Source of the DNA: Girardia tigrina | Lineage: Eukaryota | Length of the DNA: 51,500 bases | Direction of reading: 5' to 3' | Assembly: GCA_001938485.1 (NCBI GenBank) | Contig: MQRK01232526.1 | Coordinates: 8,973-60,472, forward strand | Shown: positions 3,924 to 49,439 of the stretch, piece by piece | Position numbering within the stretch: the first letter of the stretch is position 1 | Layout of the letters: each line of letters starts with the position of its first letter | Program-made: the position numbers and the translations under genes | The notes under the pieces: model-generated | Seen by the model: only the letters and a program-made list of their open reading frames with translations | Told to the model about the DNA's origin: nothing | The model's database searches: none

Positions 3924-4161
3924 TTAACATTAAAGAAAACCACAAGAAAACCTCATATTGTTGTGAGATTCAGCTGTTTCAAATTGTCAATAAAACGATT
4001 AAATTCCGAAATTAAAAATTTTGAAACAACCCAAATTCAACTGATAACCTTTTGGTCGAGGGTGGTCAAATTTTTGGTCAAAGTTGGTTGATCATAGCTG
4101 TTGATATTCAAGCTATATAGAATTATCATTCAAAAGAAAATCGGTTTATCATACTGTAATA

Positions 4162-4489
4162 TTTTTTTTGGTACCGAACCGTTGGGCCGTGGGTGCATTC
4201 AATTATGCACAAGCATTATGGCTTGGTTTTGCATATCTTTTGAATGTCTCAGTAGGCAAGGAACCTGGTGGCGCCTAGCTCCTCTCCAGGTATGGATGGA
4301 CGCTTGCTCAAAGGAGTTCATCCGCCCTTTGCTAGGTTTTGTTTTTCATCCTGCTAGGTGTCCACACACCCTCTTTACCCAGGTTTCTCTGGGTGAGAGA
4401 GCGGGTTTATTCGCCAACCATTCGACCATGGAACAGGTATTACAGGTTTACATGGTACCTATAGCAGACAGCCTACCTGATTTGACCTG
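4162..4489 (-). mobile_element. Non-autonomous RTE-related SINE-like element, copy 1
   Basis: About 320 bp closely matching 43860-44165; A-rich tail on the minus strand; 3' about 40 nt match the RTE LINE tail at 21678-21714. Confidence 0.8.
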
Positions 4490-5214
4490 TACCGTTAAAT
4501 AAATCTTCAAATTTACATTTTTACTTTATCCTTATATATAAATATAAATTTGTAATTTTACACAAATCTTTTTCTTGTTATTTATTAAAGAACAACATCC
4601 TCCACTGAGTGTACGGATATCTGCATTAAATTTAATGACACATTAAATATACAACCATTAAATATACAAGAGTGTAAAAGTAACGAATTTGATTAATTGG
4701 TTGATATACGACAAATTCGTTACTTTTACTAATAGAAAATAAACGCGAATACAAATAAAATAATGTTCAGTGAAAAAATAACTACAATCCAAACGATTAA
4801 CTGTTTAATCATATAGAAATAACTCACAATTGATGTTTCGCGATAAAATCAATTTATCGATAAAATCAAAGAAATCCGTTTGCGATGATTGTTATAAGAA
4901 ATGTAAAAGTTGTTTCAGAAAGTCTTTGAAATCGTTTCAAAATTATTCAAAAAAAAATCAAAATCATTCTTGTAAAAAAAAATTTAAATGAAAGATTCGT
5001 TCAATTTAACAAATAAACAATTGTCAATCTTTTGGAATTTTTTTTGAAATCAATTACGTTTTATATGAATTCATTGAAACTGATCCCCAAATCAATGAGT
5101 TTTGTCGTATCAAATTCCGTAATCAGACGATCTTTGAAATGCTAACGAAGAACTGGTTCGTTTATTTTGAAAAATCTCAAACGTAATTTCGGTTGTCTGA
5201 AATGTTTATCAATT

Positions 5215-5545
5215 AGCGGTATGAATGATATCAATGAACGCCGAGAATTTTTATTCACTAAACTGAACATTTCTGTCATTTTGCTCGACATCGTTCTCAA
5301 CTGCGGCCTTGATGAATCTCATCGATTTTTCGCCGTAATACAATTGAAACATCTGATCAAAAAACACTGGGAAAAGGCGTCAGCTTTCCCGACGGTGATA
5401 ATGAAATCATTCTCCGACAGTTTCTCCGCTCGTCTATCCAAATGAACGCGCCATTATGCTCGAAATTTGTCAATTTGATCGCGGAACTCATCTCAAAAAT
5501 CAGCCGCTCCGATTGGAATCAGAAATGGCCGAATTTACTCAACGT
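5215..5545 (+). pseudogene. Importin-beta family N-terminal (IBN_N) fragment, frameshifted
   Basis: LDESHRFFAVIQLKHLIKKHW then (frameshift near 5442) LIAELISKISRSDWNQKWPNLL, matching the karyopherin R..A.I.LK..I..HW ... IA+.D[WF]P..WP.L pattern; recognised by eye only. Confidence 0.6.
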
Positions 5546-5720
5546 GCAATGGACCTGCCGCTTGTACCAAGGACTCGATCAATTCCTGGGACTAGCGTCT
5601 GTTATGGGCCGACAAAAAGCTGTCAAATTGAAACGGTTACCGACGATTTTTCAATCGAAATTCTATGCTCAATCGAACACGATCGACAACAATCGCTCGT
5701 CGATCGGTCTCGAGTTCGAT

Positions 5721-5843
5721 CCGATCGACACTACAAAAATGCGTCTTGAAATTCAAGAGGGGGTGTTTGCCTTTTATCGCGGTCTGAGTGCTGGAGGGAT
5801 TCGTCAGGCATCTTCTGGCCCTGTAAAAATGGGTTTATATGAG
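5721..5843 (+). pseudogene. Mitochondrial carrier (SLC25, UCP/SLC25A14/30-like) repeat fragment
   Basis: PIDTTKMRLEIQ (Px[DE]xx[KR]xR signature) joined to EGVFAFYRGLSAGGIRQASSGPVKMGLYE; the matrix loop is deleted. Confidence 0.7.
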
Positions 5844-6911
5844 ATTCAAATGTTTTTGTCCCCCCCCGACCTGATGATCACTCCCCGCCGCCGGCGCGCC
5901 GCAGCCACAAAACCACTGCGCCCGCTCTTGCACCATCAATTGATAAGGTTATGTACAGATTGATGGTATCCAAAAACGACACAATTAAATCACTAATTGA
6001 TCTAAAGTTTAACTGAATATCACACGGAATAGCCAAGATAAATTGTCGGGATTCTCATTTTGATGGATTATCTGAATATTTCCAAAGAATTATTCGATAG
6101 GGTTCGACAATAAATTCGGATTTTCGTTGATATATTTTATTAATTGTTTATTGATTTTTTTAATTTTATTCGCAATTTTTATATTTTAATCATAATTCTT
6201 TGGTAATATAATTATACTTTTGTATAAATATATTCCTGATCTTCTCTTGCTTTTTCTACCTTCTTCTTTCTTGATTCTTTTCTTTATATTTATAAAAAAA
6301 ATAAAATGATCTTCTTTTTCCAAAATAAAATAACACAAATAAATAAACGAAATAAAATAATCTAAAATTAAAATCATCTAATAATTTCTACAAATTTCAC
6401 ATAGGTAAAGAAAGCGTTTAAAAATTTGAAAGTATTATATTTGGTGCAACATAGATATTTTTCAATCATATCAGAAAAGAAAAATACATGGCGAAAAATA
6501 TACATGCAAAATAAAACAAAAAATATATGTTATTTGTATTTTTTATGAATAATAATGTGATAATTAAATCAATGAAATATAATGATTAATTAAATAAAGC
6601 CAATTCAATTGTTCATCTTGGCTTTATTAATGTAAAACCGTTTTACTCAAATATCGAAGTGGCCATTATTGAAGTTGGCCTTGTGGAAATTTATTTTATC
6701 GTACCTCACGTCGAAGAATTGAAGTTCTCAATCTTTATTTGTTTCTTATTAAAAGAATTGCCCTATGAAATAACGCTTCCAAGAAGACAATCCAGACAAT
6801 CTCAATAAACGACGAATAACAATCAATTCCGACATCGTCCTTCAAGTGAAAAGACAAAAGAATTGTTATCCGGTTATTGAATTGTATGTGTTATTAGTTA
6901 AATTTTTTCTT

Positions 6912-7174
6912 TTTACCACGTTTTACTTAGCTTCGTTTCTTGTCTGGAACAAATCTTGCGATTGATTTTTCGACCACTTTCAGTCATCCAATTGAGCTGC
7001 ATTTTTTTATACAGGCTTGTTTCCGATGACAATACAATATTTTAAAACATTTACGGCTCTACATAAACCGCATATGCTATAATTTAACTTTATGAAAAAA
7101 ATCAATAATATTAATTAATACGTACAAAAAATTATTTTGAAATAAAACTTGCTTTTATTAAAATAAAACTTTGT
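6912..7174 (+). repeat. Interspersed repeat; inverted near-identical copy at 36371-36653
   Basis: ttttaccacgttttacttagc...aaataaaactttgt is the reverse complement of 36371-36653. Confidence 0.9.
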
Positions 7175-7259
7175 TATTTTGATTTTATTATCATTTCTGT
7201 TATTCGAAATCAATCGAAAGATTTGAATTCCTAAATGATAAGTAAAAATAGTAAAATAA

Positions 7260-8810
7260 TATTATTAATAAAAAAATTTTTTTATAAAAACAACCACGTT
7301 TTTCAAGCATTACCAATGCACTAAAAAGAGGAAAATAATTTTTTTCTAGACATGTGCGAAATTTTATACCTAACTGTAGTGACACAAATTTTTATCAGTA
7401 TTTAAAAATATTAAATATATATACATAAAATCCTATATTTCTTATTTATAAATTTATGATAGCGAGTGCAGAGGAAAACTTGACAATCGTAAAAACTATT
7501 TTGTTGATAATTGCAAAAAATCTATTTTTGTTAAAAAAAATTTGAAGAAAAACTATATATAATTTTATGAATTGTTTAAATAATTGTACATAAACAAAAT
7601 ACATTTTTTGAATTATGAAATTTGGTACTTCTTAATTTTAATTTCTGCAAATTCTTTTTCCATACTATTTTTTTATACTATCACAATTTCCCCATGAATT
7701 TGGTGTTTATCGAGTCACACAATCGATCCGACATTCCATTGAGAATAACTGGTCGAATGAGTTTCCATTCATTCGAACTCGTCAATAACGACAACAAAAT
7801 CGATAACGANNNNNNNNNNNNNNNNNNNNNNNNNNNNNNNNNNNNNNNNNNNNNNNNNNNNNNNNNNNNNNNNNNNNNNNNNNNNNNNNNNNNNNNNAAA
7901 TCGATTTATTTCAGTTATCGAATCAATTGCGATTGGACGATCGATCAGTTAATCGGGAAGATTGGCCGCCAATCGTCAACAATCAGTGACCCGGTTGCCA
8001 TGGACGCCGTGTTCTCTTACAGCGACTGGTGCCGGTCCGACAACCACACGATTCCGATTGTCACTTTCACCCCGGTCAATTCTATGCGCCACTCGAACAA
8101 GATCCGATTTGTCGATCGATGTGCTCGTGTTAGTTGATCCGAACACGAGTCTCGTGATGGTGAGCAACGATCCGTGCGCACGCGCGCCGTGTCTGCGCCT
8201 GCTGTCGATCCTGCGTGAGGTCTTTCACGACAACAAGTCTGTGCACCGCATGGTCATCCTGAGTCTCGACTCCCACTATGGCATCGAGTTGAGCGCCACC
8301 GTCGAAGCGAGCACTACGTATGCGCCGATCTTGAGCGACCTCACGGGCNNNNNNNNNNNNNNNNNNNNNNNNNNNNNNNNNNNNNNNNNNNNNNNNNNNN
8401 NNNNNNNNNNNNNNNNNNTCATCCACCAGATCGACATCGAGGACCACGAGCCGGCGATTCTCGCAATCTTCGACAATCAATCGATTCTCGCCCGGCGAAT
8501 GCCTCACGTATGGTCAGAGGATCACATCTCGTTCCTGTGTTGTCTCTTCCACCATGAGTTCGATGCGATCGAAGAGATCTCCAAACTAACCAAAAACGTG
8601 GGGCATAGAAATGATCGATTGTTACTAAAAAGCAGTAAAGAGGAAATAGCAGTTACTAATAGCAGTAATTCAGAAATACGCCCCACGTTTTTGGGTTAGG
8701 TATAAAATTTCGCACATGTCTAGAAAAAAAATTATTTTCCTCTTTTTAGTGCATTGGTAATGCTTGAAAAACGTGGTTGTTTTTATAAAAAATTTTTTTT
8801 ATTAATAATA
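7260..8810. repeat. Foldback palindrome (about 135-bp arms, about 70-bp spacer) interrupted by the 7375-8585 insertion
   Basis: 7260-7374 plus 8591-8606 is the reverse complement of 8677-8810. Confidence 0.85.
7375..8585 (+). mobile_element. Solo-LTR-like insertion, TGTAGTGA...CCAAA family, copy 1
   Basis: 5-bp TSD CTAAC (7370-7374 and 8586-8590); removal restores the palindrome arm; termini homologous to 40747-41827. Confidence 0.8.
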
Positions 8811-9312
8811 TTGTAATTAAATATCATTTTCACTCCCGAATTTATTATTTCGTTTGTTCAATCATATAAAAGTAGCTTCAGGTTCACCTTATCTGAACAT
8901 AAGGTTACTTTTATAAAGAGTATTCCTATTCTCTGGATTTGAGCCTTAAACTAATAGCGGACTATTTGAGTCTTTCCAAATATTTTCTAGAAGATATATT
9001 TTTCTCACAAGAAAACTTGCCTAAAAATAAGATTTTTAAAGAAAATGCGTTATCAATCAAAAGGTAAAAAGATAGATAAATCCAAAATAATATAAAGGTA
9101 AATGCTCCAAAAATTCTACAAAATTGTCTACTAAATACATAAATTTCAAATTAACATTGCAATTTAAGATAAATGAAATATATGCAGAAAAACTACAATA
9201 AAATCTATCCAAATCAACATGATCTAAGGGTCAAAATCAATTAAAAGTTTTTCTTTTTTAATTAATTAATATTAAAATTATTTAATTATTAATCATATAT
9301 TTTTCTATTTTA

Positions 9313-19154: not shown

Positions 19155-20695
19155 TAGGCGTGGGCACGTTTTAAAATTTTCTAAACGTTTAAACGATCTT
19201 CGTTTAGAAAACGTTTAAACGATTTCTAACTTGATTATACGAAGAAATTAGTTTGCATTTTGAGGGAACTCACACAATATTTACAACACAAAATTAGGAT
19301 TATCTTTCACTCAATCTGAATAAACTTTAATAACATATATGCATTTAAGACGTTTAATACGAATGTAAATTATTTTCAATTTCCATGAAAATTTCCTAGA
19401 AAAACGAAGCGCGAAGGAAATAAGAATATTACATAAAACATCGATCTATAGAAAGCTAGTGTGGTGAAGCTTTACAAGGGTATTTACTACCGATATATTT
19501 GGTGTTAGTACTAATAATTTTTGTTTACCAAAAATAAACAAGCATAATATATTAAACATAAATTTGAGTATTTAACATAAATTAGTTCAGATAATAATAT
19601 ATATCAAGCATCTAGCATAATCACAAATCAACACTCAAATTAACATTGAAAAAAATCATCAATTGTTTTTATTAACGAATTCTTCCTCCATAAATTTCTA
19701 CGTTTTACTGATGCAACCGGTTCCATCTTACTTTTTGCGAAATTGAAAAGCCATTACTCAGCTTGATTTAATAATTATACACTTATTAAATTTAACTGTT
19801 TAATAAATTGAATCGCAATATTGTTTTATTATTACCATTCAAAATTCTGTTTCAAGGAAAATAGTATCAAAGATTCAAATAATAAAAATAATTCAATCAT
19901 CAAAAAGATAAAATTCGCAGTATAATTTTATATATTATAACAAATATATTTTTATATACGAGGGGCGTTCCGAAAGTAAGTGGAAATACTTATATGCGGG
20001 TGTTCGCGTGTGTGTGCATCTTACAGAGGGACAGATGGCGTGGTGGCGTGATGTACTTACCAGCAAATAGAAATCGAGCAAAAGTGGCATTGGTCCGTGC
20101 AACATGTGAGCAGCATAGAAGAAACTGTCATAGTCAGTGTTTTCATTTTTGTTTAACACATGGAAGACACAGTACGTTCTCAGCGTGCCATCATCTTTTT
20201 CCTTTGGAAAGAGGATACTCCAGTGTCTGACATTGTGCGCCGCTTATCAAATGTGTTTCAAGGAAGAGCCCTGCAAAAGTCTGCCGTCTACAATTGGGTG
20301 TATCAATTCGAAATGGACGTGAATCCTTGGACGACGCGGACAGGAGTGGACGTCCAGCAACGACGAGCACGGTAGAAAATGTGGAAAAAGTGTCTGAGAC
20401 CATCAATGCAAATCGCTGCCTTACCTGCCTTGACAGATGAGGATGATGAATGACATTGTATTCCATCAATAAATGCTTTCTTGTGGTGTCGTCTCCCTTT
20501 TTTCCACTTACTTTCGGAACGCCCCTCGTACGTAAAACCAATCATAAAATTTCAAAAAAAGTATAACCCATGTCGTGAGTTTTGAAATACGAAATTAATA
20601 ATTATACGCTCGTTTAGAAATCGCTAAACGTTTAAACGCCCTAAAAAACTAAAAAGTTTAAACGGTCGTTTAAACGCTAAACGTGCCCACCTCTA
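19155..20695. mobile_element. Non-autonomous hAT element containing a nested mariner
   Basis: TIRs tag(gc/ag)gtgggcacgttt; 8-bp TSD gtgttctt/gtattctt; subterminal aaacg/cgttt repeats. Confidence 0.85.
19959..20528 (+). mobile_element. Internally deleted mariner element (570 bp)
   Basis: Perfect 28-bp TIR cgaggggcgttccgaaagtaagtggaaa with TA TSD; ORF at 20160 encodes a mariner N-terminal HTH (QRAIIFFLWKE...IVRRLSNVF...VYNWVYQF). Confidence 0.92.
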
Positions 20696-25925: not shown

Positions 25926-27229
25926 GGCCATGCAACGGTCGGAAAGCATGGTGGTCATAAAAAGCATTTAATATCCCCGGAGTTCGGTAAGAAAATCCTG
26001 GATTTCATGGATGATAATCCCACCTGTTTTTTTGCGAGAAATAGGTTCCTTTTTAGTGCAATCATAAAATGTGACAATATCCAGAAGCACCATCTCCTGA
26101 TATTTGGAAGGTCAATTATTAACATTCAAAAAAGCAAAACCCTGTGTCGAAAATCGAAACTCCGAGCGAGTGAAACAATCCCGATATGAATACGCTCTCA
26201 GATTTATTGAAGAAGGCTGGAGGACGCATGAGTGTGTATTCATAGATGAGGTGGGCTTCAATCTTTGGATCCAGAGATTGAATGCTAGATCCAAGAAAGG
26301 AGTTCCGGCCAATGTAGTCGTTCCCACAAATCGAGGTAGAAATATTTCAATGATAATGGCTATTTGGAAATTCGGCTCAATAAATTTTAGAGTGGTCCCC
26401 GGTAGCGTCAACCATGACGTGTACCAAGATTTCATTGAGTAGCTATCATCAAAGCTCCCAGATGGCAATTATCGTTTGATAAACGATAATACATAATTCA
26501 TTTCGAAAAAAACTCTATTTATAGGGTGTACAATTTACCAACATATTCTCCTTTCTTGAACCCCATTGAAACCGCTTTGCCAAACTGAAGGGAAATATCA
26601 GAAGTCAAATGTCGATGAATAGGGAACTCTTATATTTAACCCATGTTGAAAGGATGAGAACTCTGGAGACAACAATTAAAGAAGAAATTCAAAAGGATGA
26701 TTGCAAAGATTTATCCAACTATTTTAGACATTGTCGTAAATTCTTGGCAAAATGTCTCCTAAAATATAACATCTTCGGAGATTGAGTGACAATTGTTGAT
26801 TGATTTGTTATGTTCTAAAATAAAAATGTTTATTAGTGACTTAAATTCAAAAGATAAAAATATATATTAAAATGACTTACAAAAATTAACTCCATCATCT
26901 CGCGCGTCGTCAAATGGAGGTTACAATCAACGATTGTGGCCATCATGAGGACAGGTTCACTTTTTCCGGCGTTGCTCCTCTCGAAGACCACCGTCGCCGA
27001 CGTCGTTATAACAATCGGTTGAAAATAGAATACGATTGCAAAAATTAAATTGCAAAATTGAAATTAATCGACAGTACATAAAATTATATCATAAAATTGA
27101 ATGTTATTCACTTTATGATATAACATTATATGAATCTTTTTTAATGTTGCAATATTATGTAACAGTGTATTAAAGCAATCATAAAGCAAAATTATGATTG
27201 CTTTCACTGTTATAAAATGAAACGCACTA
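25372..27229 (+). mobile_element. Tc1/IS630-like transposon
   Basis: Imperfect TIRs cagtgcatttcattt / aaatgaaacgcacta flanked by TA and enclosing a transposase pseudogene. Confidence 0.7.
25627..26785 (+). pseudogene. DDE_3 (Tc1/IS630-like) transposase pseudogene with a 46-nt intron
   Basis: HTH region, CVFIDEVGFNLW, RGRNISMIMAI, LINDN, LPTYSPFLNPIETA; stops, frameshifts and a (TA)n expansion at about 25884-25919. Confidence 0.88.
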
Positions 27230-30880: not shown

Positions 30881-31050
30881 TGTTATTATTATTTATAAAT
30901 TCAGTGCTTCTCTCCTCTCCTTTCCCAAAAGATAATCATATCAAATGCATTGTTTCATAACTTGAATTTTTAAAATCATTAAGTATTTACCTCTGACATG
31001 TTTGCGCTATCCTGCTGCCTTTTAATATATATGTGTATATTATAAATGTA
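30881..31050 (-). repeat. Putative 3' LTR of the Gypsy element
   Basis: Follows PPT-like GAGGGGA on the minus strand and ends in ATAACA; start is TA instead of TG, and there is no second LTR to confirm. Confidence 0.35.
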
Positions 31051-34000
31051 TCCCCTCGATTTAAATGGCTTTAGCCATTCCACATTTCTGATCAATATTC
31101 TGCCATCATCTAATTGTATCTCGTAACTTCTTTCGTGTTGTCGGTTCTTTATTGTGGCTGGGCCCATATATTGATCCTCATCCTTCGTTACGTTTTCTTT
31201 CTTTATCAGCACTTTATCTCCAATTTGGAATACTCGTTTCGTCTGTGTCGTGGTTTTATTCATTTCCTTCTCGACATGTCTTTTTCCATCGGTGTTTTTC
31301 CACCAATGTCTTAGTTTTCTACCAAAAATTATTTCTGCTGGAGATATCCCTGTGGTTGCCTGAATTGTGCTATTTAGCATAAACTCTATTTCTGGCAGGG
31401 TTTCCGTCCAATCTTTGTGGACCTCGTCTTTCATCCGTATATTCATGACATCCCTAATTGTTCTGAATTGTCTCTCAACAATCCCATTTGTATTGTGGTG
31501 GGAAGGATTGGAATATACTATCTCAGCTTTAAATTTATTTGCTGTTTCTTTAAAAAGGGCTGATTCGAATGTTTTTCCTCTATCGACATGGATTTCTTTT
31601 AGTGGTCCGTATTTGAAAATCCATTTGTCTAGTAATACCTTTCACACGGTTTTCTCGTCTTGATGAGCTACTGCGTTCAAACTAATGTATCTGCTAAATT
31701 GATCGATTATGTTTATGTTTAATATGTTTCTCTTTTGTTTTTATTGTTAAGGGCTTTCTTTTCTGACAATTCATACAACTTTGCACAATTTCCTTTACCG
31801 TTTTTCTCATATCTTCCATATCGAAATCATCTTTAAAATAATTATAAACTTTCTTACTACCAGTGTGGCAAAGCATCTTGTGTATTTCTTCCACGAATTC
31901 AGTCCTTTTACCTTTCGGAATCCAGTATTTGTTATCTATTGCGTTACGATATCATCTTCCAGTAACCATTTCTTTGTTTTCCCAGTTTTGATATCTGATC
32001 TAATCTGTTTTATCTCGTCATTATCTTTCTGCCATTTGAATCCTTTGGATTCATCGTCTAACGCTAGGATTCTTGTTTTAACTTTACCCTTCTTAGCTTC
32101 CTCATGCATAGTTTGNNNNNNNNNNNNCATTTCACAGGAATTTCTCGACTTTGCATCGGCGTTAGAGTGTTTTTCACCTTTCCGGTATTCCATTGTCATA
32201 TCCAACCCACTTAGAAAATTTATCCAAGTTTGAAATTGCGGAGTGATTGGGTTCTTTGTCGTCATCATAAAGGTAATGGTTTTATGATCCGTTCTTAATA
32301 GAAATTTCTTGCCGTAAAGATAGTGCTTGAAGTGTTGTGTAAAATAGTAGATTGCCAGCAGTTCCTTTCTCATAATACGGTATCCCAATTCCTGTTTGTT
32401 CATTTTGTGGGATCCATATGCAATCACTCTTTCTCTTCTATATATATCTTTCTGAGATAGCACCGCGCCAATGGTGTCAAACTAGCGTCTGTGTCCAATA
32501 TGAATTCTTTTCCGAAATCTGGGTATGCTAGTATTGGTGTATTTATCATCTTTTCCTTTAATTTTCGAAACGCTTCGTTGCATTCTTCCGTCCATATTAG
32601 CTTTTTTTCTTTATTCTTTCCGCATAGTCCTTCCAATACTTTTGAATACTTTGCGTAATCTTTTAAGAATTTCCTGTTATAGTTCGTTAAACCTAAAAAG
32701 CTTCTCAAATGTTTTACACATGAAGGATTCTGAAACTTGCTAATCGCATCAATCTTTGTCTGATCTGTTTCTATGCCATCTCTGCTGATCACATATCCCA
32801 AAAACTTTGTCTTTTCCACCAAAAAGTGACATTTATCTGGATTAATTCTCAGACCCGGTTGCTTTATTTTACTAAATACGTGTTCAATTCGTTTGAGGTA
32901 TTCTTCCTTGTCTTTTGCGAAAATTAAAATATCGTCTAAATACACAACTGCCTCTTTCCAATTTTATTCACCCAAAACTCTTACCATCAGTTCGTGAAAC
33001 GTTGCTGGTGCCGCTGCAATTCCAAATGGCATTCTCTTGAAACAGTATTGGCCATCCTTTGTTGAAAATGCTGTTTTGACTTTTGATCCATCTTCAAGTT
33101 CCACTTGATGGTATGCGTTTCCTAAATCGATTATTCTAAAATACTTTGCTCCATTTAGTGTATTCAGCATTTCCTCAACATTCGGCATAGGAAATGCAGG
33201 TCTTACGGTGATTTTATTCAATTGTCGAAAATCTACACACACTCGAATGTCCTGTTTCTCCTTTTTCCAAACACAAACTAGAGGGAAATTCCACGGTGAA
33301 CTGCATTTCTCTATAATATCGTTTTCTTNNNNNNNNNGAATAATATCGTCCAGTTTTTCCTCGAAATGTTTTGATTGTCGATAAGGTTTCACTAAAACTG
33401 GTTCTCCATGCGTTTCGATCTTGTGTTTGGTCAGTGACGTCCTTCCAATATCCCATTTGTCGGCCATAAATATTGATTTAAATTGTGTTTTCAAACAGCT
33501 CTTTTATTCTCCTCAGTCTATCCTCGTCTGATGGATTGTCTCGTATTGCCAGTAACTTATTAGTATTTGATGGTTCTCTCTTTAACTTAATCCTGAATTT
33601 GTCCAAGAAATCTATTCCTGCTATCTTTTCTGGATCTAAATCTTTGACCACAAAGAAATCCACTGTTTTCTGCATTCTTTCAATTATCACTTTAAGTTGA
33701 ACAATACCATAGTTTATAAGTTCTGAATCATTCGCACAATGTATTNNNNNNNNNNNNNNNNNNNNNNNNNNNNNNNNNNNNNNNNNNNNNNNNNNTCTTT
33801 AATTATCTCTGCTTTAATAACGTTGACTCGAGCTCCTGTATCTAACAGGCAATTGACATTTTTATTCTTTATTCGGAACTCTATACTTGGTCTACCTTTC
33901 AATTCTTTATAATTAATGTTAAACTTCGGTAATATCAATACATCTTCAGCATTCTTTTTTATTTTTTTCTCATTTTCTATATCCATATTAGCACATATTT

Positions 34001-34475
34001 CATCGTTTTCTTCAGGTTCATTATCTAATCTACACATCTCCAGAGGAATATTTTCAAACACATCATCAAACATACAATCACAAACACATTCATACATACA
34101 ATCAATCATACACCTACATTGAGTTCCTATTGTAGCACACTGATNNCTTCTCCCTGAGATCGTGCGTCCTCGTTTCCCTGATCATTTCTGAATTTTCTGT
34201 TACCCACGGGATATTCCAGTCTTTTGCCATCTTCTCTTCTATACGTTCCTTCAGAATAGTCCCCTTTTTTTGAGTCTTCTCTTATGTAAAATTCATCATC
34301 TAGTTCGTCCACTTCTGCTACTGGATATTTCCTATTCGTGTATCTTGGCCGTTCTCTATACCGTTGATTTGAGTAATTTTGCCTGTTATTCCATTGATTA
34401 TTTACATTATCCATTTTCCATTGATCACGCTCCCTATATCTATTAGGGTTTTCATAACACTGTGTTCTTAAATAT
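31051..34475 (-). mobile_element. Ty3/Gypsy retrotransposon, 5'-truncated; gag end plus frameshifted pol (PR-RT-RH-INT)
   Basis: LLDTGARVN (protease), CVDFRQLN, MPFG, YLDD (RT), LDTDAS, LRTDHK (RNase H), H..LCH...C..CQ and YMGP (integrase). Confidence 0.97.
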
Positions 34476-36370: not shown

Positions 36371-36653
36371 ACAAAGTTTTATTTTAATAAAAGCAAGTTT
36401 TATTTCAAAATAATTTTTTTGTACGTATTAATTAATATTATTGATTTTTTTCATAAAGTTAAAATTTTCATAAAGTTAAATTATAGCATGTGCGGTTTAT
36501 GTAGAGCCGTAAATGTTTTAAAATATTGTATTGTCATCGGAACCAAGCCTGTATAAAAAAAATTCAGCTCAATTGGATGACTGAAAGTGGTCGAAAAATC
36601 AATCGCAAGATTTGTTCCAGACAAGAAACGAAGCTAAGTAAAACGTAGTAAAA
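36371..36653 (-). repeat. Inverted copy of repeat 6912-7174
   Basis: Direct sequence comparison; has a local ttcataaagttaaa duplication; the left end runs into a gap. Confidence 0.9.
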
Positions 36654-36759
36654 TCAGTAAAAAGTAAGTATGTATTATAGATATAATTATCAAAACTTCT
36701 TTCAGAATCAAAATTTACTTTTTAAAAAATTTTTCCAAAGGGGTTTGTACTGCATTGTC

Positions 36760-39476: not shown

Positions 39477-39650
39477 TTTCAATTAATTCAAATGGCAATT
39501 GGGTTAATAAAACAAAAAAAAACAAAAAATAGCCGTTTTCCCAAACATTTATTTTTATTTTGCAATACTAGTTTCGCCATATTGGCATCTTCAGTTGACT
39601 AATTGAAATTTCAGATTTAAGTCCCTTTTATATAGCGGTAGAGTGTTACA
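39476..39650 (-). repeat. Penelope pLTR-like repeat, uninterrupted copy of 43841-44311
   Basis: Reverse complement matches 43841-43859 plus 44176-44311; ends at (TA)n. Confidence 0.85.
39563..39597 (-). ncRNA. Minimal type I hammerhead ribozyme
   Basis: CAA-CTGAAGA-T-GCCA(ata)TGGC-GAAA-CTAG-TA^TTG; palindromic ACTAGT stem III. Confidence 0.8.
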
Positions 39651-40049
39651 TATTCGATTGATCTTTCTTAAGATTAGTTGATTTCTTTTCACAAACTTAT
39701 CTAGTGATCCATTCGTAGAAGTCATACGGGAATTTGATTTCATTTCAATCAAAATTTATTGTGCTTTTTTAATAATCATTTAAAGAGGTTCGCGTCTCCG
39801 TTTTAATCGTTCATCAATAACAAAATCATTTAACAAACTGTCTAAAAATCATTTAACAAACCTGTGGGAAACTAAAAATTTCTTTTATGATCGTTGTATA
39901 AAAGTAATGGTTTGCTCAATTTTGTTCATTTTTCATTTGTGTATAGGGAATTTATTTGGCTTTTAACAAGAATTACGAGTAAAATGTAATATGACTTAGT
40001 ATTACAAATATTTAGAGACAAAAAAATATACGTAATCTAATTTATTATA

Positions 40050-42443
40050 CAGGGTGATCATAAAGTAACTACCTGGTTTTAAACTGCAATAACATTTTTT
40101 GGCAAAACATTATGAAAAAATGGTTTTAAGTAGCAAAAAAGCATTTATTGATATTTAATAATATTCAACAGAATAACCATTGACATCAATACAATGTTTA
40201 AGGTGTCTATTAAAAGACTTAATGACATTTAGGAACATTTTACAATTTATTTTTGCAGCTTCTTGACAAATAAAATCATCAAGTTGCTGAATTGTTTCTG
40301 GTTTTCTCTTGTACACTTCATTCTTCAAATACCCCTACAGAAAAAAATCGAGTGGTGTCAAATCAGGTGACCTAGCCGGTCATACACATGGACCACATCG
40401 TCCCAGCCAACATTGTGGAAACGCTTCATCCAAAAATTGTCGCACAATCAGTGAATAATGGGTAGGTACTCCATCTTGCTGGAACACAGCTTTCCGTTTG
40501 TATGTTCTTGATAACGATGGCATAAAGCAACTTTATAATATAACCATATAATACGCCGCTGTTATGTTTCCTTGAATAAAAAATGGCCCATAAACACGAG
40601 TTGAAGACAACCCCATCCAAACATTAACTTTTTCACTAGCCTGTGACCTCTGATATGTTTCGGTTGGTGTTTCAGTGTCCTAAATGCGACAGTTATGTCT
40701 GTTTACAATCGTTAAGATGGAAAGTTGACTCATCAGAGAATATCAGTGTAGTGATTCAAAATCATAACTATATTTATAAATATGAATATATACTAAAATC
40801 TGATATTTTTTATTTATAAATACTATTGCCGGACTCTATGCAACAACGATGCAAAAATGCAAATCATTATTATCTTACATTCTAGTATTCAAATTTGGAA
40901 ATTTGTTTTCAAATNNNNNNNNNNNNNNNNNNNNNNNNAAAAAACAATTTTTTTCCGCATGCGTTGTTAAATGTAAATAAAGATTTATTTGATAAATAAT
41001 TAATTAAAAAAAATATATTGGACATAAATGATCAAATTGGAATTTGTTTGAATGTTCCTTTTATTAATGGCAATTTGTAAATAAACAAATATATTTTGAA
41101 CGGTTTTCTTTCAATTTTGATTTGAACCAGTATTCTCACCAATCGACTTCAACTCATCAAAAAGAAAATTCTTCTGCAACTAATGCGACACAAATATTCC
41201 TTTCCGTTTCTCCATCCGGTCGATCATACGGCGCTCAATATCCCANNNNNNNNNNNNNNNNNNNNNNNNNNNNNNNNNNNNNNNNNNNNNNNNNNNNNNN
41301 NNNNNNNNNNNNNNNNNNNNNNNNNNNNNNNNNNNNNNNNNNNNNNNNNNNNNNNNNNNNNNNNNNGAACATCTTCAACTCGAAACTCGAAAAATTACCG
41401 TCCCAAGAAAACGACATCTCCTCCGGCATCAGCAACACCAACAGCGCCAAGAAAGACACGAAATCTAGCAGTATCAACAAAGATTTGTCCCCGGAGCCGC
41501 CACCAGTGTGCGACATAAAGGAATCACTCCGGCCGACCACTAAGCGCCTCAAATCGACCTCGAATTACAACGAAGCGACATCGACCCATGCGAGCAATTG
41601 TTCGATTTCTCCGGACGCGAAACCCAAATCNNNNNNNNNNNNNNNNNNNNNNNNNNNNNNNNNNNNNGTTCGAGCTCCCAGAACACGTCAGACGGTCAAT
41701 AGAGGCGATATTACCGGTCGATTGCGTCGCCATGGTGATCGAGCGCGCGTGGAACAAGAACGACGGCAACCGCAACTGGGAGGACAGTTTGTGTCCCAAG
41801 TCCGACGCGATCGACGAGGCCACCAAAATCAGGTTACTAAGAAAATTTTCATCTGCATCTATCGATTGAATTAACGTTTCACATATAAAACGTCTAAGAG
41901 CGCAATCTTCTTCATACAAAAGTTGCGTGGCTGAATTCTATAGGAGAACATTTTAAAGTCGTTTCGTAATACTTTTTGAACAGTTCCATAAGAGTAAGTC
42001 AGAGTTGACAACGATTTCCTGATAGCAGACTGGGGTTCTTGCTTAAAATGTTCAGCTATCTCATTTTTCTTTTCCTCATCAATTGGCGTCTTCCATATTT
42101 TAGGGCATTTAGAACGCTTCCTGTTTCTTCAAACTTTTTGAAGATGCTTCTAATAATTTTTTCAGTTGGAATATTTTTCCATTTAAGTCGTTGAAGTTCT
42201 CTTCTTACTAAAGTCACTGACTCATGCTTCGCAAATAAAATAATAATTTTTACACACTGATTTACATCCATTTTGAATCTTACGCTTAAAACAATAACAA
42301 CAATTAATACATTTAAACAAAATGTACTTTTAATTAAATTTTTAAGAATAAGCTTCAAGATGCCTTTATAATTAAAAAGAAATATAATATAGTTCAAAAG
42401 TTATTGCAGTTTAAAACCCGATAGTTACTTTATTATCACCCTG
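40050..42443 (-). mobile_element. DD41D (rosa/Visitor) Tc1-mariner element interrupted by a 1081-bp insertion
   Basis: 44-bp TIRs cagggtgat...aaactgcaataac with TA TSD; transposase about 42271 to 40155 with FEETGSV HTH, LIFSDES, FQQDG and SPDLTPLDFF; 41 residues counted between the second and third D. Confidence 0.92.
40747..41827 (+). mobile_element. Solo-LTR-like insertion, TGTAGTGA...CCAAA family, copy 2
   Basis: 5-bp TSD ATCAG (40742-40746 and 41828-41832); removal restores transposase frame SNLIFSDE. Confidence 0.82.
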
Positions 42444-43585
42444 TATATTAGCAATCTTTATAGATTTCTGTAATTAATTCGACAAGTAAAATGGGAATGG
42501 TTGTTTCAACAGTAAATAATATCCGGTGACCATTTGCATTATAGTGAATCTGAATTTATATGACAATTAATACAAATATTATATTAGTAAAATGATGTAA
42601 ACTTTTCCTTGGACCTACATTAAGTTAGTTCAAGATAAGTACTAATTCTTTTCTCGATAATTTATATTATGTAATTTAATATATATTTTTTCAAATTTAA
42701 TTTATTTATTTTTAATAATTATAAAATTCATAATATTCTTTTCTAAAAAAGGATAAATAATATTATTTTATTAAAAAAATTCATTAAAAAATTATGGTTT
42801 TAATTAACTGATTCATTTTGTTCTAAGACATAGGAAACAAAAATAAAACATTTTTATTGCCGCTAAGTTGAGGATTCGAAACTTTATGACTGAAAGTCTT
42901 CCATGTAATTCGTTTGTCGGAGATTGTTTTAGGAAATCACAGATTAAATTTATATAAAATTTTTGAGCCATTTTATTACCATATTTAATATTTTTTGAAT
43001 CGACTAACTAAAGTCTTGATTTTTTGATTTATTTATTTTTGTGCAATTATAGTGATGAGGAGTCAGTTAAAATTTAAAATTTGCAAATTAATTTATAAAA
43101 AATTTTAAATTAAAATGTTAAACATAATTAGATAATTATGTAAAAAATAAAAATATATAAAGTTTACAAATTTTAATAATAAAAAAATGATTTTTGTAGA
43201 AAAACTACAAACTGTACAATAATTAAAATAAACAAAACTTTTCAGTTAAAAAGGTTAGATTAATCAAAACCAATATATTTAAAAAAAGATAATATATTTA
43301 AAAAAATAAAGAAATAAGGAAGTTAAATTGATTTTTTATAAAAACAATAAATTTGGTAAAATTATAATGTAGAATGACATTATTTTGAAAATAAAAATAT
43401 TATTATAAATTAAATTTCACATAACTTAAATATTTTTTAATAATAGTAAATTTCAGTGATAAATATAATATTGAAAGTTTAATAAATTTATACAAAAGTA
43501 TAAATTTGATTTGAAAGAAAATTTAAAAAATGAATTTTGGCAAAATAATAAATAATAAATAATATATATATATATATATATATAT

Positions 43586-43797
43586 CCATGGAATTTAGAA
43601 ACCTATTTTTGAAGGATTTTTACGCAATCAATTTTCTCCAAATTTTGTACAATTACTCATTTTTGATGACAATAAATGATAATGTTAAAATTTGATCAAA
43701 AAAACTTTCTAAGGTCCCAAAATGAGAAAAAAACGGCCAAATCGGAGTTCCTAATCAGTATTAATATAAAAATATCTGGTCATAAATTATAAGTACT
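43586..43797 (+). repeat. Second copy of repeat 237-450
   Basis: Collinear similarity; begins after (TA)n. Confidence 0.75.
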
Positions 43798-43859
43798 TTG
43801 TATTATATATATATAAAGCCTTAAATTGAGTAATATTGCGTAACAGTCTACCGCTATAT

Positions 43860-44165
43860 TTGTTTTGGTACCGTAGCCTTTGGGCCATGGGTGCACTCAA
43901 TTATGCTTGGGTTTGGCATATACATTTGAGTGTCTCAGTAGGCAAGGAACCTGGTGGCGCCTATCTCCTCTCCAGGTATGGATGGTCGTTGGCTCCAAGG
44001 AGCTCATCCGCCCTTTGCTAGGTTTTTGTTTTTCATCCTGCTAGGTGTCCACACACCTCTTCACCCAGGTTGCTCTGGGTGAGAGAGCCAGTTTATTCGC
44101 CAACCATTCGACCATGGGACAGGTATTACAGGTTTACATCGTACCTGTAGCAGACAGATTGCCTG
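43860..44165 (-). mobile_element. Non-autonomous RTE-related SINE-like element, copy 2
   Basis: 10-bp TSD ACCGCTATAT at 43850-43859 and 44166-44175; matches 4162-4489. Confidence 0.88.
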
Positions 44166-44206
44166 ACCGCTATATAAAAAGGACTTAAATCTGAAATTTC
44201 AATTAG

Positions 44207-44243
44207 TCAACTGAAGATGCCAATATGGCGAAACTAGTATTGA
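44207..44243 (+). ncRNA. Minimal type I hammerhead ribozyme
   Basis: TCAA-CTGAAGA-T-GCCA(ata)TGGC-GAAA-CTAG-TA^TTGA. Confidence 0.82.
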
Positions 44244-44309
44244 AAAATAATTTTTTGGAAAAATGGCTATTTTTTGTTTTATTAACCCGATTGCCATTGG
44301 AATTAATTG

Positions 44310-48005: not shown

Positions 48006-49439
48006 GAAAAGGTTCATTAACTTATTGTTTAATATAGCTTTCTGTCGTTTTCGTTGTAAGAGTGTTCCATTGTTTGCAATTATACAGCTTTATGTGACTT
48101 CTTTTACTGTCACTCACATATAATCCATATTAAAATCATTTTTAAGGTAATTGCGAACCTTATTTTACTGCCAGTAAGACGCAAAATATTATGCATGCGT
48201 TCCACAAAATTAATTCTTTTACTTTTTGGAATCCAGTATTTATTGTCGATTTTAGCTTCAATATCATCTTTGTTCTTTCTTTCATGATATCTTTCATTAT
48301 TTGCTTAATTTCATCCCTTACCTTCCTTTATATGAATCCATTGAGATCTATATTTATTTGCAAAGATTCCTGTTTTTAATTTTCCACTTCTTCGCTTCTT
48401 CGTGCATTGTTTAAAACTGACTACACAATTCCCAATATTTCTTTGACATTGCACCTGTTTTATAGTATTTTCCCCTTTCCTACATTCCATTAGCATATCT
48501 AAACAACTAAAAAGCTTATCTATGTTTGAAAATGCGGTGTAAATAAATTTTTCGTATTCATCAGAGGCTTTGTGATATGTTTTTAGTAAAAAATTTTACC
48601 GTATAAGAAGTTTTTAAAATGTTGATTAAAAGTCATTACGGAGGAGAATCAGGTTTTCAGAATTCCTTGACTGAGTCCTTTTTATCGATTTTATTTCAAA
48701 ATATTTTACATTTACTTTTTTAATTTGCACAATTGTGTTCTTTCTAAACTTTAAAATTTCTATATTTAAATTATAATTTCGTCCTTCAATTATGACATTT
48801 GTTTTTCAATTTTGTATATCGTTCTAAACTTTCAGCTTCTCTTTTACGAGCTTTTTCTCGACTTAATTTAATATTTATTTGCTGAAAACTCATATAATTG
48901 TTAGAGAAATTATTTGGTCTTTTATTTTTCATTATCATTAAAATTTTAGACATAATTTGATTAACCATTTAAATTCGCTTTCTCTTTTCTTGAACCATTG
49001 GCCAATTTTTTTATTTTCACAAACATTTTTTAATAGTGACAAAAACAGTCACGTAACAAAAAATAAACCAATTCATGCATTAAAACAAATGTTATGATTC
49101 ATTATTTTCAATAATTTATGTATATATATATTTCGTTAATCCTTTTTTAAAATAATTTTTATTAATTTTTTGTTAATTATTTTTTAACACGCAAATTATA
49201 AATTACTGATTATTAGCAAAGTTACAGATGAACCGAAATGTCAATATTCACTTCAATTTTAGATAATAAAAATTCAGATCATTCAAAAAATTTTATAAAC
49301 TATGCATAATTACTTTGACAATAACTGACAATAGATTATTCTTTGAAAATTCAAACTTTACATTATTATAGATTATTATCTAGAACTGATAATGACATTT
49401 TTAATAATAATGAAAACAAAGGCCATTTTTGAATATTAA

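What the first reader, a model, noticed from the sequence alone, without database searches (positions are those of the whole stretch)
7375..8585. Unclassified mobile family with asymmetric TGTAGTGA...CCAAA termini and 5-bp TSDs
Seen: this segment and 40747-41827 both start TGTAGTGA and share a similar AT-rich leader (taaaatc..atattt.ttatttataaat; ttgta.ataaacaaa.ta.atttt..gaa). Both then become CpG/TCGA-rich and end agt(t/c)cga(t/c)gcgatcga(a/c)gag....ccaaa. Each has an exact 5-bp TSD (CTAAC, ATCAG), and excision restores the host sequence. There are no real TIRs (5/8 end match) and no poly-A. Known: 5-bp TSDs without TIRs are typical of LTR integrases, whose ends are normally TG...CA; Transib has 5-bp TSDs but CAC...GTG TIRs. 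Inference: solo LTRs or non-autonomous derivatives of an integrase-mobilised family with a non-canonical AA-3' end in two independent, diverged copies. True length is uncertain because both copies contain N gaps.
Basis: partly seen in the sequence, partly recalled or inferred. Interest (0 to 1): 0.85.

Follow-up and report, generated by a model that had tools for sequence, protein, structure and literature searches.

The report
Mobile elements carrying host gene fragments
Two 1.1-1.2-kb insertions, plus a third partial relative, belong to an unclassified helper-dependent mobile family whose shared AT-rich 5' leader and 29-bp 3' end enclose the 5' parts of different cellular genes (one is Integrator subunit 7), so they are gene-fragment carriers and not plain solo LTRs.

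Summary
Segments 7375-8585 and 40747-41827 are real insertions, one into a foldback element and one into a Tc1/mariner transposase gene. Each has an exact 5-bp target-site duplication.

They share only three stretches: a 79-bp 5' end (TGTAGTGA...), a ~24-bp block in an AT-rich leader, and a 29-bp 3' end (...CCAAA). Their interiors are unrelated.
- **Copy A** carries, in sense orientation, about the first 275 codons of an Integrator subunit 7 gene (Pfam E 2e-14; profile E 2e-21).
- **Copy B** carries an ORF I could not identify.
- **A third partial relative** (~5146-5738) carries an importin-beta N-terminal fragment in front of the same 3' block.

Proteins from other public contigs show an intact 300-codon version of A's ORF and a B/A mosaic.

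These are therefore not plain solo LTRs. They are a non-autonomous, gene-fragment-carrying ('Pack-like' or transducing) family. The fixed 5-bp duplication and TG start suggest an integrase/DDE-type insertion. However, the ends are asymmetric, and I found no LTR pair, TIR, poly-A or partner element. DNA of further copies could not be fetched, so the mobilising mechanism is inferred. I rate it a new variant of a known kind, of moderate interest.

The parts
7375..8585 (+). Copy A, whole insertion (1211 bp, two N gaps)
   Evidence: Bounded by the 5-bp TSD. The empty site is shown by the other arm of the host palindrome.
7370..7374 (.). Left TSD of A (CTAAC)
8586..8590 (.). Right TSD of A (CTAAC)
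7375..7693 (+). A: AT-rich leader (GC 0.19). It holds the shared 5' block 7375-7453 and the shared block 7584-7607.
7694..8556 (+). A: cargo ORF. It comprises an upstream open stretch plus the INTS7 N-terminal fragment (about INTS7 codons 1-275, lacking ~58 internal codons). Relative to the sibling P0001 it is broken by one frameshift.
   Evidence: Pfam INTS7_N E 2e-14; PDB INTS7 chains; tblastn of P0001 in two frames; hhalign E 1.8e-21
8557..8585 (+). A: shared 29-bp 3' module ending CCAAA, read in frame with the cargo
40747..41827 (+). Copy B, whole insertion (1081 bp, three N gaps)
   Evidence: 5-bp TSD. The flanks of the host transposase ORF are in the same phase.
40742..40746 (.). Left TSD of B (ATCAG)
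41828..41832 (.). Right TSD of B (ATCAG)
40747..41121 (+). B: AT-rich leader (GC 0.21). It holds the shared 5' block 40747-40821 and the shared block 41075-41097.
41122..41798 (+). B: cargo with open reading pieces of unknown origin. There is one phase change across an N gap.
   Evidence: No Pfam, PDB or INTS7-profile match. Part of it recurs next to A-like sequence in P0021.
41799..41827 (+). B: shared 29-bp 3' module ending CCAAA
5146..5711 (+). R3, probable third relative: TCGA-rich cargo with an importin-beta N-terminal fragment. Its 5' end and TSD are not resolved.
   Evidence: Pfam IBN_N E 6.4e-7, above the cut-off; composition
5712..5738 (+). R3: variant of the 3' module, 17 of 18 nt identical to A's. 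Homology stops at the A run.
   Evidence: The core pattern has 3 hits in the window against 0.03 expected; alignment; blastn.
7244..7374 (.). Host of A: left arm of a foldback/palindromic element
   Evidence: (I14, I25)
8586..8830 (.). Host of A: rest of the left arm, the loop, and the uninterrupted right arm
40043..42450 (-). Host of B: Tc1/mariner-type element with 55-bp TIRs and a decayed transposase on the minus strand, interrupted by B
   Evidence: I21; DUF4817 HTH; DDE-type motifs in the ORF pieces

Best explanation
A and B, and probably a third degenerate relative R3, belong to one non-autonomous composite mobile-element family.

Each copy has three parts:
1. An AT-rich 5' leader of about 320-390 bp. 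It starts TGTAGTGA and holds two conserved blocks, one of them TATA-like.
2. A GC- and TCGA-rich cargo made of the 5' part of a cellular mRNA-like sequence in sense orientation.
3. A 29-bp 3' module ending CCAAA.

The cargo differs between copies: INTS7 in A, importin-beta in R3, unknown in B. Cargo pieces also recombine between members.

Shown: the three-part architecture, the true insertions, and the 5-bp duplications.

Inferred:
- Cargo was acquired and exchanged by template switching or recombination at short similarities. This most likely happened on RNA/cDNA, as in retroviral or LTR-mediated transduction.
- The elements are inserted in trans by an enzyme that makes a fixed 5-bp staggered cut and needs only the short terminal sequences. 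This is most likely a retroviral-type integrase or related DDE enzyme.
- No partner element was identified.
For: - Real insertions: 5-bp TSDs in 2 of 2 copies, both with empty-site support.
- Only the ends and one leader block are shared; the interiors are unalignable at DNA and protein level.
- Cargo A is INTS7. Evidence: Pfam INTS7_N E 2e-14, human INTS7 chains, and profile comparison of the sibling P0001 at E 1.8e-21. That alignment covers INTS7 residues 29-275, which places the INTS7 start codon inside the element.
- P0001, from another contig, has an uninterrupted 300-codon ORF. It departs from A directly after the last codon of the element, so a third copy shares the same 3' boundary.
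- R3 carries a different gene fragment (IBN_N, E 6.4e-7) in front of the same 3' core, which has 3 hits against 0.03 expected.
- P0021 is a mosaic: B-like sequence followed directly by A-like sequence.
- All cargo pieces share the orientation of the leader and read in frame through the 3' module.
- Just before the module, A and P0001 repeat an internal INTS7 motif seen in the exon-like relatives P0002 and P0012. This suggests the junction formed at a short similarity.
- Capture of partial mRNAs, multi-gene chimeras and secondary mobilisation by microsimilarity-dependent template switching is documented for LTR retrotransposons across animals (PMC5131818).
- A Ty3/gypsy-type pol remnant lies in the same window, so this enzyme class exists in the genome.
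Against: - Only two complete copies and one partial copy were seen, all in one window. DNA of further copies could not be obtained.
- The ends are asymmetric and the 3' end is AA, not CA. There are no LTRs or terminal repeats, which LTR-mediated chimeras are expected to keep.
- Absence of introns could not be tested, because the parent genes are not available.
- Two identical TSD lengths are a small sample.
- The TATA-like block lies about 70 nt inside the element. That fits an LTR-type or DNA-type life cycle better than a simple RNA copy.
- B's cargo could not be shown to come from a gene.
Confidence: 0.5

Rival explanations
1. Solo LTRs of two or three related LTR-retrotransposon families. 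Only the integrase-binding ends stay conserved, and the LTR interiors happen to contain captured gene fragments. The ORF that runs off the 3' end would continue into the internal region of a full-length element.
For: - 5-bp TSD, TG start and ~1.1-1.2 kb size.
- Conservation limited to the termini, as between related LTR families.
- A TATA-like block near the 5' end and an AATAAA-like block downstream.
- A CA lies 2 nt inside the 3' end in all three copies.
- A gypsy-type pol remnant lies in the window.
Against: - The 3' terminus is AA, not CA.
- No paired copies and no adjacent retroelement-type interior were seen in 51.5 kb.
- Three different cellular gene fragments in three LTR lineages, all sense-oriented and in frame to the end, would need three independent captures inside LTRs.
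- About 70% of each 'LTR' would be coding-like U5.
Confidence: 0.2
2. LINE-dependent (target-primed) retroposons or tripartite chimeric retrocopies. The 29-bp 3' module plus AAA would be the tail recognised by a partner LINE's reverse transcriptase. Cargo and leader would be added by template jumping toward the 5' ends of other RNAs.
For: - Asymmetric ends, no TIR, and a short A run at the 3' end.
- The cargo consists of the 5' parts of mRNAs, as expected when a reverse transcriptase runs to a template's 5' end and jumps.
- Mosaics exist.
- R3 may be 5'-incomplete.
Against: - The TSD is exactly 5 bp in both complete copies, whereas TPRT usually gives variable lengths.
- There are only three A's and no simple-repeat tail.
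- There is no tRNA/5S/7SL-type head and no Rfam match.
- The 3' hairpin is no more stable than shuffled sequence.
- No LINE sharing the tail was seen among the window ORFs that I scanned.
Confidence: 0.15
3. Pack-type non-autonomous DNA transposon of an undescribed DDE superfamily. It would be cut and pasted at the DNA level and would acquire genomic gene fragments during gap repair.
For: - Fixed TSD and conserved subterminal blocks with free interiors.
- Gene-fragment mosaics resembling Pack-MULEs.
- R3's 3' end contains the exact reverse complement of the 5' heptamer, which hints at an ancestral TIR.
Against: - A and B have no significant TIR.
- All cargo is in one orientation.
- In P0001, 236 INTS7-homologous codons run without an interruption, which suggests cDNA origin.
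- From my own knowledge, no eukaryotic DNA superfamily combines a 5-bp TSD with these ends.
Confidence: 0.12
4. Not a family: chance resemblance of AT-rich and TCGA-rich sequence, or assembly misjoins across the N gaps.
For: - AT-rich background gives many weak blastn hits.
- Each copy contains N gaps.
Against: - The shared blocks are colinear and anchored exactly at both insertion boundaries.
- Shuffles give 0.00 matches to the block patterns.
- Empty sites are supported for both copies.
- The gaps in A keep the frame and match a sibling's length.
Confidence: 0.02

Closest known systems
LTR-mediated chimeric retrocopies / transducing retroelements (Tan et al. 2016, PMC5131818; maize Bs1; acute transforming retroviruses)
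   Same: - Partial cellular mRNA sequences in sense orientation between element-derived 5' and 3' parts.
- Chimeras of more than one gene.
- Junctions at short similarities.
- Behave as non-autonomous elements that move again.
- Integrase-size TSD.
   Different: Those chimeras keep both LTRs. Here there is no terminal direct repeat at all, and the 3' end is AA, not CA. The element-derived 3' part is only 29 bp.
Solo LTRs of Ty3/gypsy, BEL/Pao or Ty1/copia elements
   Same: 5-bp TSD, TG start, kilobase size, and conservation concentrated at the ends.
   Different: - The interior is cellular coding sequence that differs between copies.
- An ORF runs off the 3' end.
- The 3' terminus is non-canonical.
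- No paired copies were seen.
Pack-MULE / Pack-CACTA ('Pack-TYPE') transduplicating DNA transposons (own knowledge)
   Same: Non-autonomous elements whose conserved ends enclose mosaics of host gene fragments, often from GC-rich 5' gene regions.
   Different: Those have long TIRs and TSDs of 9-10 or 3 bp, carry introns, and hold fragments in both orientations. None of that is seen here.
Transib and Ginger DNA transposons (own knowledge)
   Same: 5-bp (Transib) or 4-5-bp (Ginger) TSD. Ginger ends begin TGT.
   Different: Both have clear TIRs (CAC...GTG or TGT...ACA). A and B have none.
Helitrons (own knowledge)
   Same: Asymmetric ends, frequent capture of gene fragments, and a palindrome about 12 nt from the 3' end in copy A.
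   Different: Helitrons make no TSD, insert between A and T, and have TC...CTRR ends. Here 5-bp TSDs are proven and the hairpin is not conserved or significant.
SVA-type composite retroposons and LINE-tailed SINEs (own knowledge)
   Same: A composite head-body-tail build, helper dependence, and the ability to pick up exons of host genes.
   Different: Those end in poly-A or simple repeats, have variable TSDs and are often 5'-truncated. None of this is seen in A or B.

Membership tests
Solo LTR / LTR retrotransposon | TSD of fixed length, 4-6 bp | tested here: met
   5 bp in both copies, with empty-site support.
Solo LTR / LTR retrotransposon | Termini 5'-TG...CA-3' forming a short inverted repeat | tested here: not met
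   The 5' TG is present, but the 3' terminus is AA in A and B, with a CA 2 nt inside. There is no significant inverted repeat.
Solo LTR / LTR retrotransposon | The same sequence occurs as direct pairs around an interior with PBS, PPT and gag-pol | tested here: inconclusive
   No pairs and no A/B-like sequence next to the gypsy-type pol remnant in this 51.5-kb window. The genome was not available.
LTR-mediated chimeric retrocopy / transducing retroelement | Partial cellular mRNA, sense-oriented, between element-derived flanks; multi-gene mosaics | tested here: met
   INTS7 codons ~1-275 in A; IBN_N in R3; B/A mosaic P0021.
LTR-mediated chimeric retrocopy / transducing retroelement | Cargo lacks the introns of its parent gene | not testable with these tools
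   No parent-gene DNA was available. The only pointers are an uninterrupted 236-codon INTS7 stretch in P0001 and the exon-like relatives P0002/P0012.
LTR-mediated chimeric retrocopy / transducing retroelement | Both LTRs retained at the ends of the chimera | tested here: not met
   The longest direct repeat between the first and last 150 nt is 6-7 nt.
Pack-MULE / Pack-TYPE DNA transposon | Terminal inverted repeats of the parent superfamily | tested here: not met
   Best 7 of 20 matches, reached by 80-93% of shuffles.
Pack-MULE / Pack-TYPE DNA transposon | Host gene fragments between conserved ends | tested here: met
Transib | 5-bp TSD | tested here: met
Transib | CAC...GTG terminal inverted repeats | tested here: not met
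   The ends are TGTAGTGA... and ...CCAAA.
Helitron | No TSD; insertion between A and T; 5'-TC...CTRR-3' | tested here: not met
   A 5-bp TSD is proven, and the termini differ.
Helitron | Conserved 3' subterminal hairpin | tested here: not met
   The fold is no more stable than shuffles in A and B (z -0.45 and +0.53), and the stem is not kept in B.
LINE-dependent retroposon (SINE, processed or chimeric retrocopy) | Poly-A or simple-repeat 3' tail | tested here: not met
   Only AAA before the TSD.
LINE-dependent retroposon (SINE, processed or chimeric retrocopy) | Variable TSD length and frequent 5' truncation | tested here: inconclusive
   5 bp in 2 of 2 copies, and both 5' ends are complete. 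R3's 5' end is unresolved.
LINE-dependent retroposon (SINE, processed or chimeric retrocopy) | tRNA/5S/7SL-derived head | tested here: not met
   No tRNA and no Rfam match, even at E <= 1.

The most novel reading that the evidence does not exclude
This would be a previously undescribed class of LTR-less, integrase-type (5-bp TSD) element. It repeatedly transduces the 5' halves of cellular mRNAs in frame with a fixed 29-bp 3' module and carries no stop codon of its own. At least one lineage (P0001, an intact 300-codon ORF) would be kept open because a truncated Integrator-7 N-terminal domain benefits the element, for example as a decoy acting on Integrator-dependent RNA processing or silencing.
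Probability: 0.1. Interest if true: 0.8.

Novelty: new variant of a known kind. Interest (0 to 1): 0.5.

Why it matters
- **Exon shuffling in an animal genome.** If the reading is right, this AT-rich animal genome has a helper-dependent element that picks up, reshuffles and disperses the 5' coding parts of cellular genes. That would be an animal counterpart of plant Pack-type elements or of retroviral transduction, and a ready source of exon shuffling and truncated proteins.
- **An insertion mechanism outside the current scheme.** The combination of a fixed 5-bp duplication with asymmetric ends, no LTR, no TIR and no poly-A fits no superfamily in the usual classification. Finding its partner would define how it inserts.
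- **Annotation.** These copies would otherwise be called as spurious INTS7-like or importin-like genes.

Tried and rejected
**Searches for further copies**
- More copies in the window: the 5' and 3' block patterns with up to 3 mismatches hit only A and B. A third TGTAGTGA at 10615 (-) is unrelated. A scan for TGTAG...CCAAA with 5-bp TSDs found only A and B on the + strand; the minus-strand hits had AT-only repeats and I took them as chance.
- Sensitive blastn of the leaders against the window gave only AT-rich noise.
- A protein-guided scan of the metagenome contigs found no relative. A viral-contig pattern scan found nothing.
- The metagenome DNA pattern gave one hit, L001. It is a chance match in an AT-rich, plant-like contig without the 5' terminus.

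**Cargo and donor**
- B's cargo gave no Pfam, PDB or INTS7-profile match.
- The donor or host taxon could not be named. The nearest INTS7, P0003, is an unnamed UniParc entry with no close relatives. The next named hits are Schistosoma and bivalves at 37-44%.

**Structural tests**
- No tRNA or Rfam family.
- No TIR, terminal direct repeat or significant 3' hairpin.
- No LTR pair around the gypsy-type pol remnant.
- R3's 5' end: two candidates (around 4764 and 4621) and a 6-bp candidate TSD were examined, and none convinced me.

**Literature**
- Searches for these termini, a host mariner TIR or flatworm gene-carrying elements found nothing relevant.

- I also reasoned about roughly where A's frameshift lies.
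- Early scripts printed three-frame translations with stop marks.
- None of the remembered letters went into a tool or served as evidence.

Full report
**1. Checking the observation.**
- Both segments begin TGTAGTGA and end CCAAA.
- A pairwise comparison finds three colinear shared blocks: the first 79/75 nt (78%, E 6e-13), a block at 7584-7607 / 41075-41097 (87%), and the last 29 nt (79%). Everything between them is unalignable.
- Patterns taken from the 5' and 3' blocks match only these two places, with 0.00 expected in shuffles.
- The leaders have GC ~0.2. The 3' two-thirds have GC ~0.5, CpG o/e ~1.5 and TCGA 6-7 times expectation.

**2. They are true insertions with 5-bp duplications.**
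- Copy A sits in one arm of a foldback element. The uninterrupted arm aligns with A's left flank up to 8695 and with A's right flank from 8699, so exactly 5 bp (CTAAC) are duplicated.
- Copy B sits in a Tc1/mariner-type element with 55-bp TIRs at 40043-42450. It lies inside the minus-strand transposase ORF, just before the first DDE-type motif.
- I translated the two flanks of B separately. Both read the duplicated ATCAG in the same codon phase.
- A window-wide scan for TGTAG...CCAAA with identical 5-mers outside finds only A and B on the + strand.

**3. The N gaps.**
- In A both gaps keep the reading frame. Their nominal lengths are 30 and 24 codons, and the sibling protein P0001 has 28 and 24 residues between the same anchors. 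A therefore appears continuous and about 1.2 kb long.
- I used only these counts. No letters were taken for the gaps.
- In B the 121-N gap keeps the frame. The 37-N gap implies one phase change, unless its size is inexact.

**4. What is inside A.**
- On the + strand A encodes an Integrator complex subunit 7 N-terminal fragment: Pfam INTS7_N E 2e-14, and human INTS7 chains at residues 109-166 and 272-307.
- The protein database holds a sibling from another contig, P0001 (300 aa, 80-92% identical to A), with one uninterrupted ORF.
- A profile of INTS7 proteins aligns P0001 residues 95-285 with INTS7 residues 29-275 (E 1.8e-21), with one internal gap of about 58 residues. The INTS7 start codon therefore lies inside the element, preceded by about 190 nt of exon-like sequence.
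- Relative to P0001, A's ORF has one frameshift.
- P0001 and A diverge directly after the last codon of the element. This gives a third independent copy with the same 3' boundary.
- Exon-like relatives P0002 and P0012 (84% identical to A) lose homology at both ends of a 113-codon stretch.
- The closest full-length-type INTS7, P0003 (59-65%), has no taxon and no close relatives. The next named hits are Schistosoma and bivalves.

**5. What is inside B and R3.**
- B's open pieces match nothing in Pfam, the PDB or the INTS7 profile, and they do not match A.
- P0021, an out-of-frame ORF from another contig, matches B 41668-41802 and, directly afterwards, A 8222-8500. Mosaics of B-type and A-type cargo therefore exist.
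- A third TCGA-rich island at ~5146-5738 carries an importin-beta N-terminal fragment (IBN_N, E 6.4e-7).
- This island, R3, ends in a variant of the same 3' module: 17 of 18 nt match A, and the core pattern has 3 hits against 0.03 expected. After the module the composition changes, and a mitochondrial-carrier-like piece follows.
- R3's 5' end and TSD could not be fixed.
- In all three copies the cargo reads in frame through the module and off the 3' end, with no stop inside the element.

**6. What it is not.**
- There is no TIR (best 7 of 20, within shuffles), no terminal direct repeat longer than 7 nt, and no poly-A.
- The small palindrome in A's 3' module is not conserved in B and is no more stable than shuffles.
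- There is no tRNA and no Rfam family, even at E <= 1.
- There are no paired copies, and no A/B-like sequence lies beside the Ty3/gypsy-type pol remnant at 30979-34414.
- Helitron, Transib, Ginger, Pack-MULE and SINE definitions each fail at least one tested feature (see the membership table).

**7. Interpretation.**
- The simplest reading is a non-autonomous composite family with a shared leader, exchangeable cargo made of 5' parts of cellular mRNA-like sequences, and a minimal 29-bp 3' end.
- Several features match what microsimilarity-dependent template switching by retroelement reverse transcriptases produces (PMC5131818): partial genes, multi-gene mosaics, sense orientation, a long uninterrupted coding stretch, and a junction in A that repeats an internal INTS7 motif.
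- The fixed 5-bp duplication, the TG start, and a CA 2 nt inside the 3' end point to an integrase/DDE-type insertion step.
- Against this, such chimeras normally keep both LTRs and these have none. The terminal dinucleotide is AA, and no partner was found.
- I therefore put the composite-element reading at about 0.5. The rivals are solo LTRs (0.2), LINE-dependent retroposons (0.15), an unknown Pack-type DNA transposon (0.12) and artefact (0.02).
The 'non-autonomous, possibly integrase-mobilised family' part stands as an inference.

**8. Limits.**
Ends and TSDs of further copies, parent-gene introns and a partner element could not be examined.
- The source organism was not identified. It is not human-like.
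- Slips: in my private reasoning I wrote from memory a human INTS7 sequence and short terminal motifs of known elements, and I considered roughly where A's frameshift lies. Early scripts printed framed translations with stop marks. None of this was used as evidence or sent to a tool.

**9. Verdict.**
- I rate it a new variant of a known kind (gene-fragment-carrying non-autonomous elements).
- It is of moderate interest until a genome-wide census shows how it inserts.

Noticed in passing
window 5146-5960: A third GC- and TCGA-rich mosaic on the + strand. An importin-beta N-terminal fragment (one frameshift) is followed by unknown sequence, the family's 3' module (5712-5738), and then a mitochondrial-carrier-like piece in the same frame and a very C/G-rich stretch. 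Its 3' end contains the exact reverse complement of the family's 5' heptamer.
   Followed up: partly
window 7244-7374 and 8586-8830; also 6903-7174 vs 36371-36663: The host of copy A is a foldback element with ~130-bp arms that are 98-99% complementary. The sequence just upstream of it recurs inverted (91-98%) at 36371-36663, directly after a 516-N gap.
   Followed up: partly
window 39555-39639 and 44166-44250: An 85-bp inverted repeat (98%) brackets a ~4.7-kb stretch that contains the mariner-type host of copy B. The nesting is therefore three deep.
   Followed up: no
window 19958-20530: A short mariner-type element with ~26-bp perfect TIRs and an N-terminal HTH-like ORF remnant. It is unrelated to the finding.
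   Followed up: no
window 30979-34414 (-), and 48165-48251: A Ty3/gypsy-type pol remnant with protease, RT and RNase H matches. It is split over at least six ORF pieces and four N gaps. I did not count the individual breaks. No LTR pair was found. A second RT-like fragment, 72% similar, lies near 48.2 kb.
   Followed up: partly
window 4159-4480 vs 43856-44166; 213-461 vs 43562-43805: A GC-rich repeat unit (87-92% identity) is present twice. It gave no Pfam or Rfam match and may be a SINE-like or other TE fragment.
   Followed up: no
window 26104-26468: A Tc1-type DDE_3 transposase fragment (E 2.6e-7).
   Followed up: no
window N runs: Several N runs abut (TA)n microsatellites (35855, 44349). 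Those inside copy A have lengths that match a sibling protein to within two codons. This fits masking or well-sized gaps better than unknown-size gaps.
   Followed up: partly
L001 1201-1228 (-): The only metagenome match to the 28-nt 5' block pattern lies in an AT-rich contig full of plant-like tandem repeats. It lacks the TGTAGTGA terminus, so it is a chance match.
   Followed up: yes
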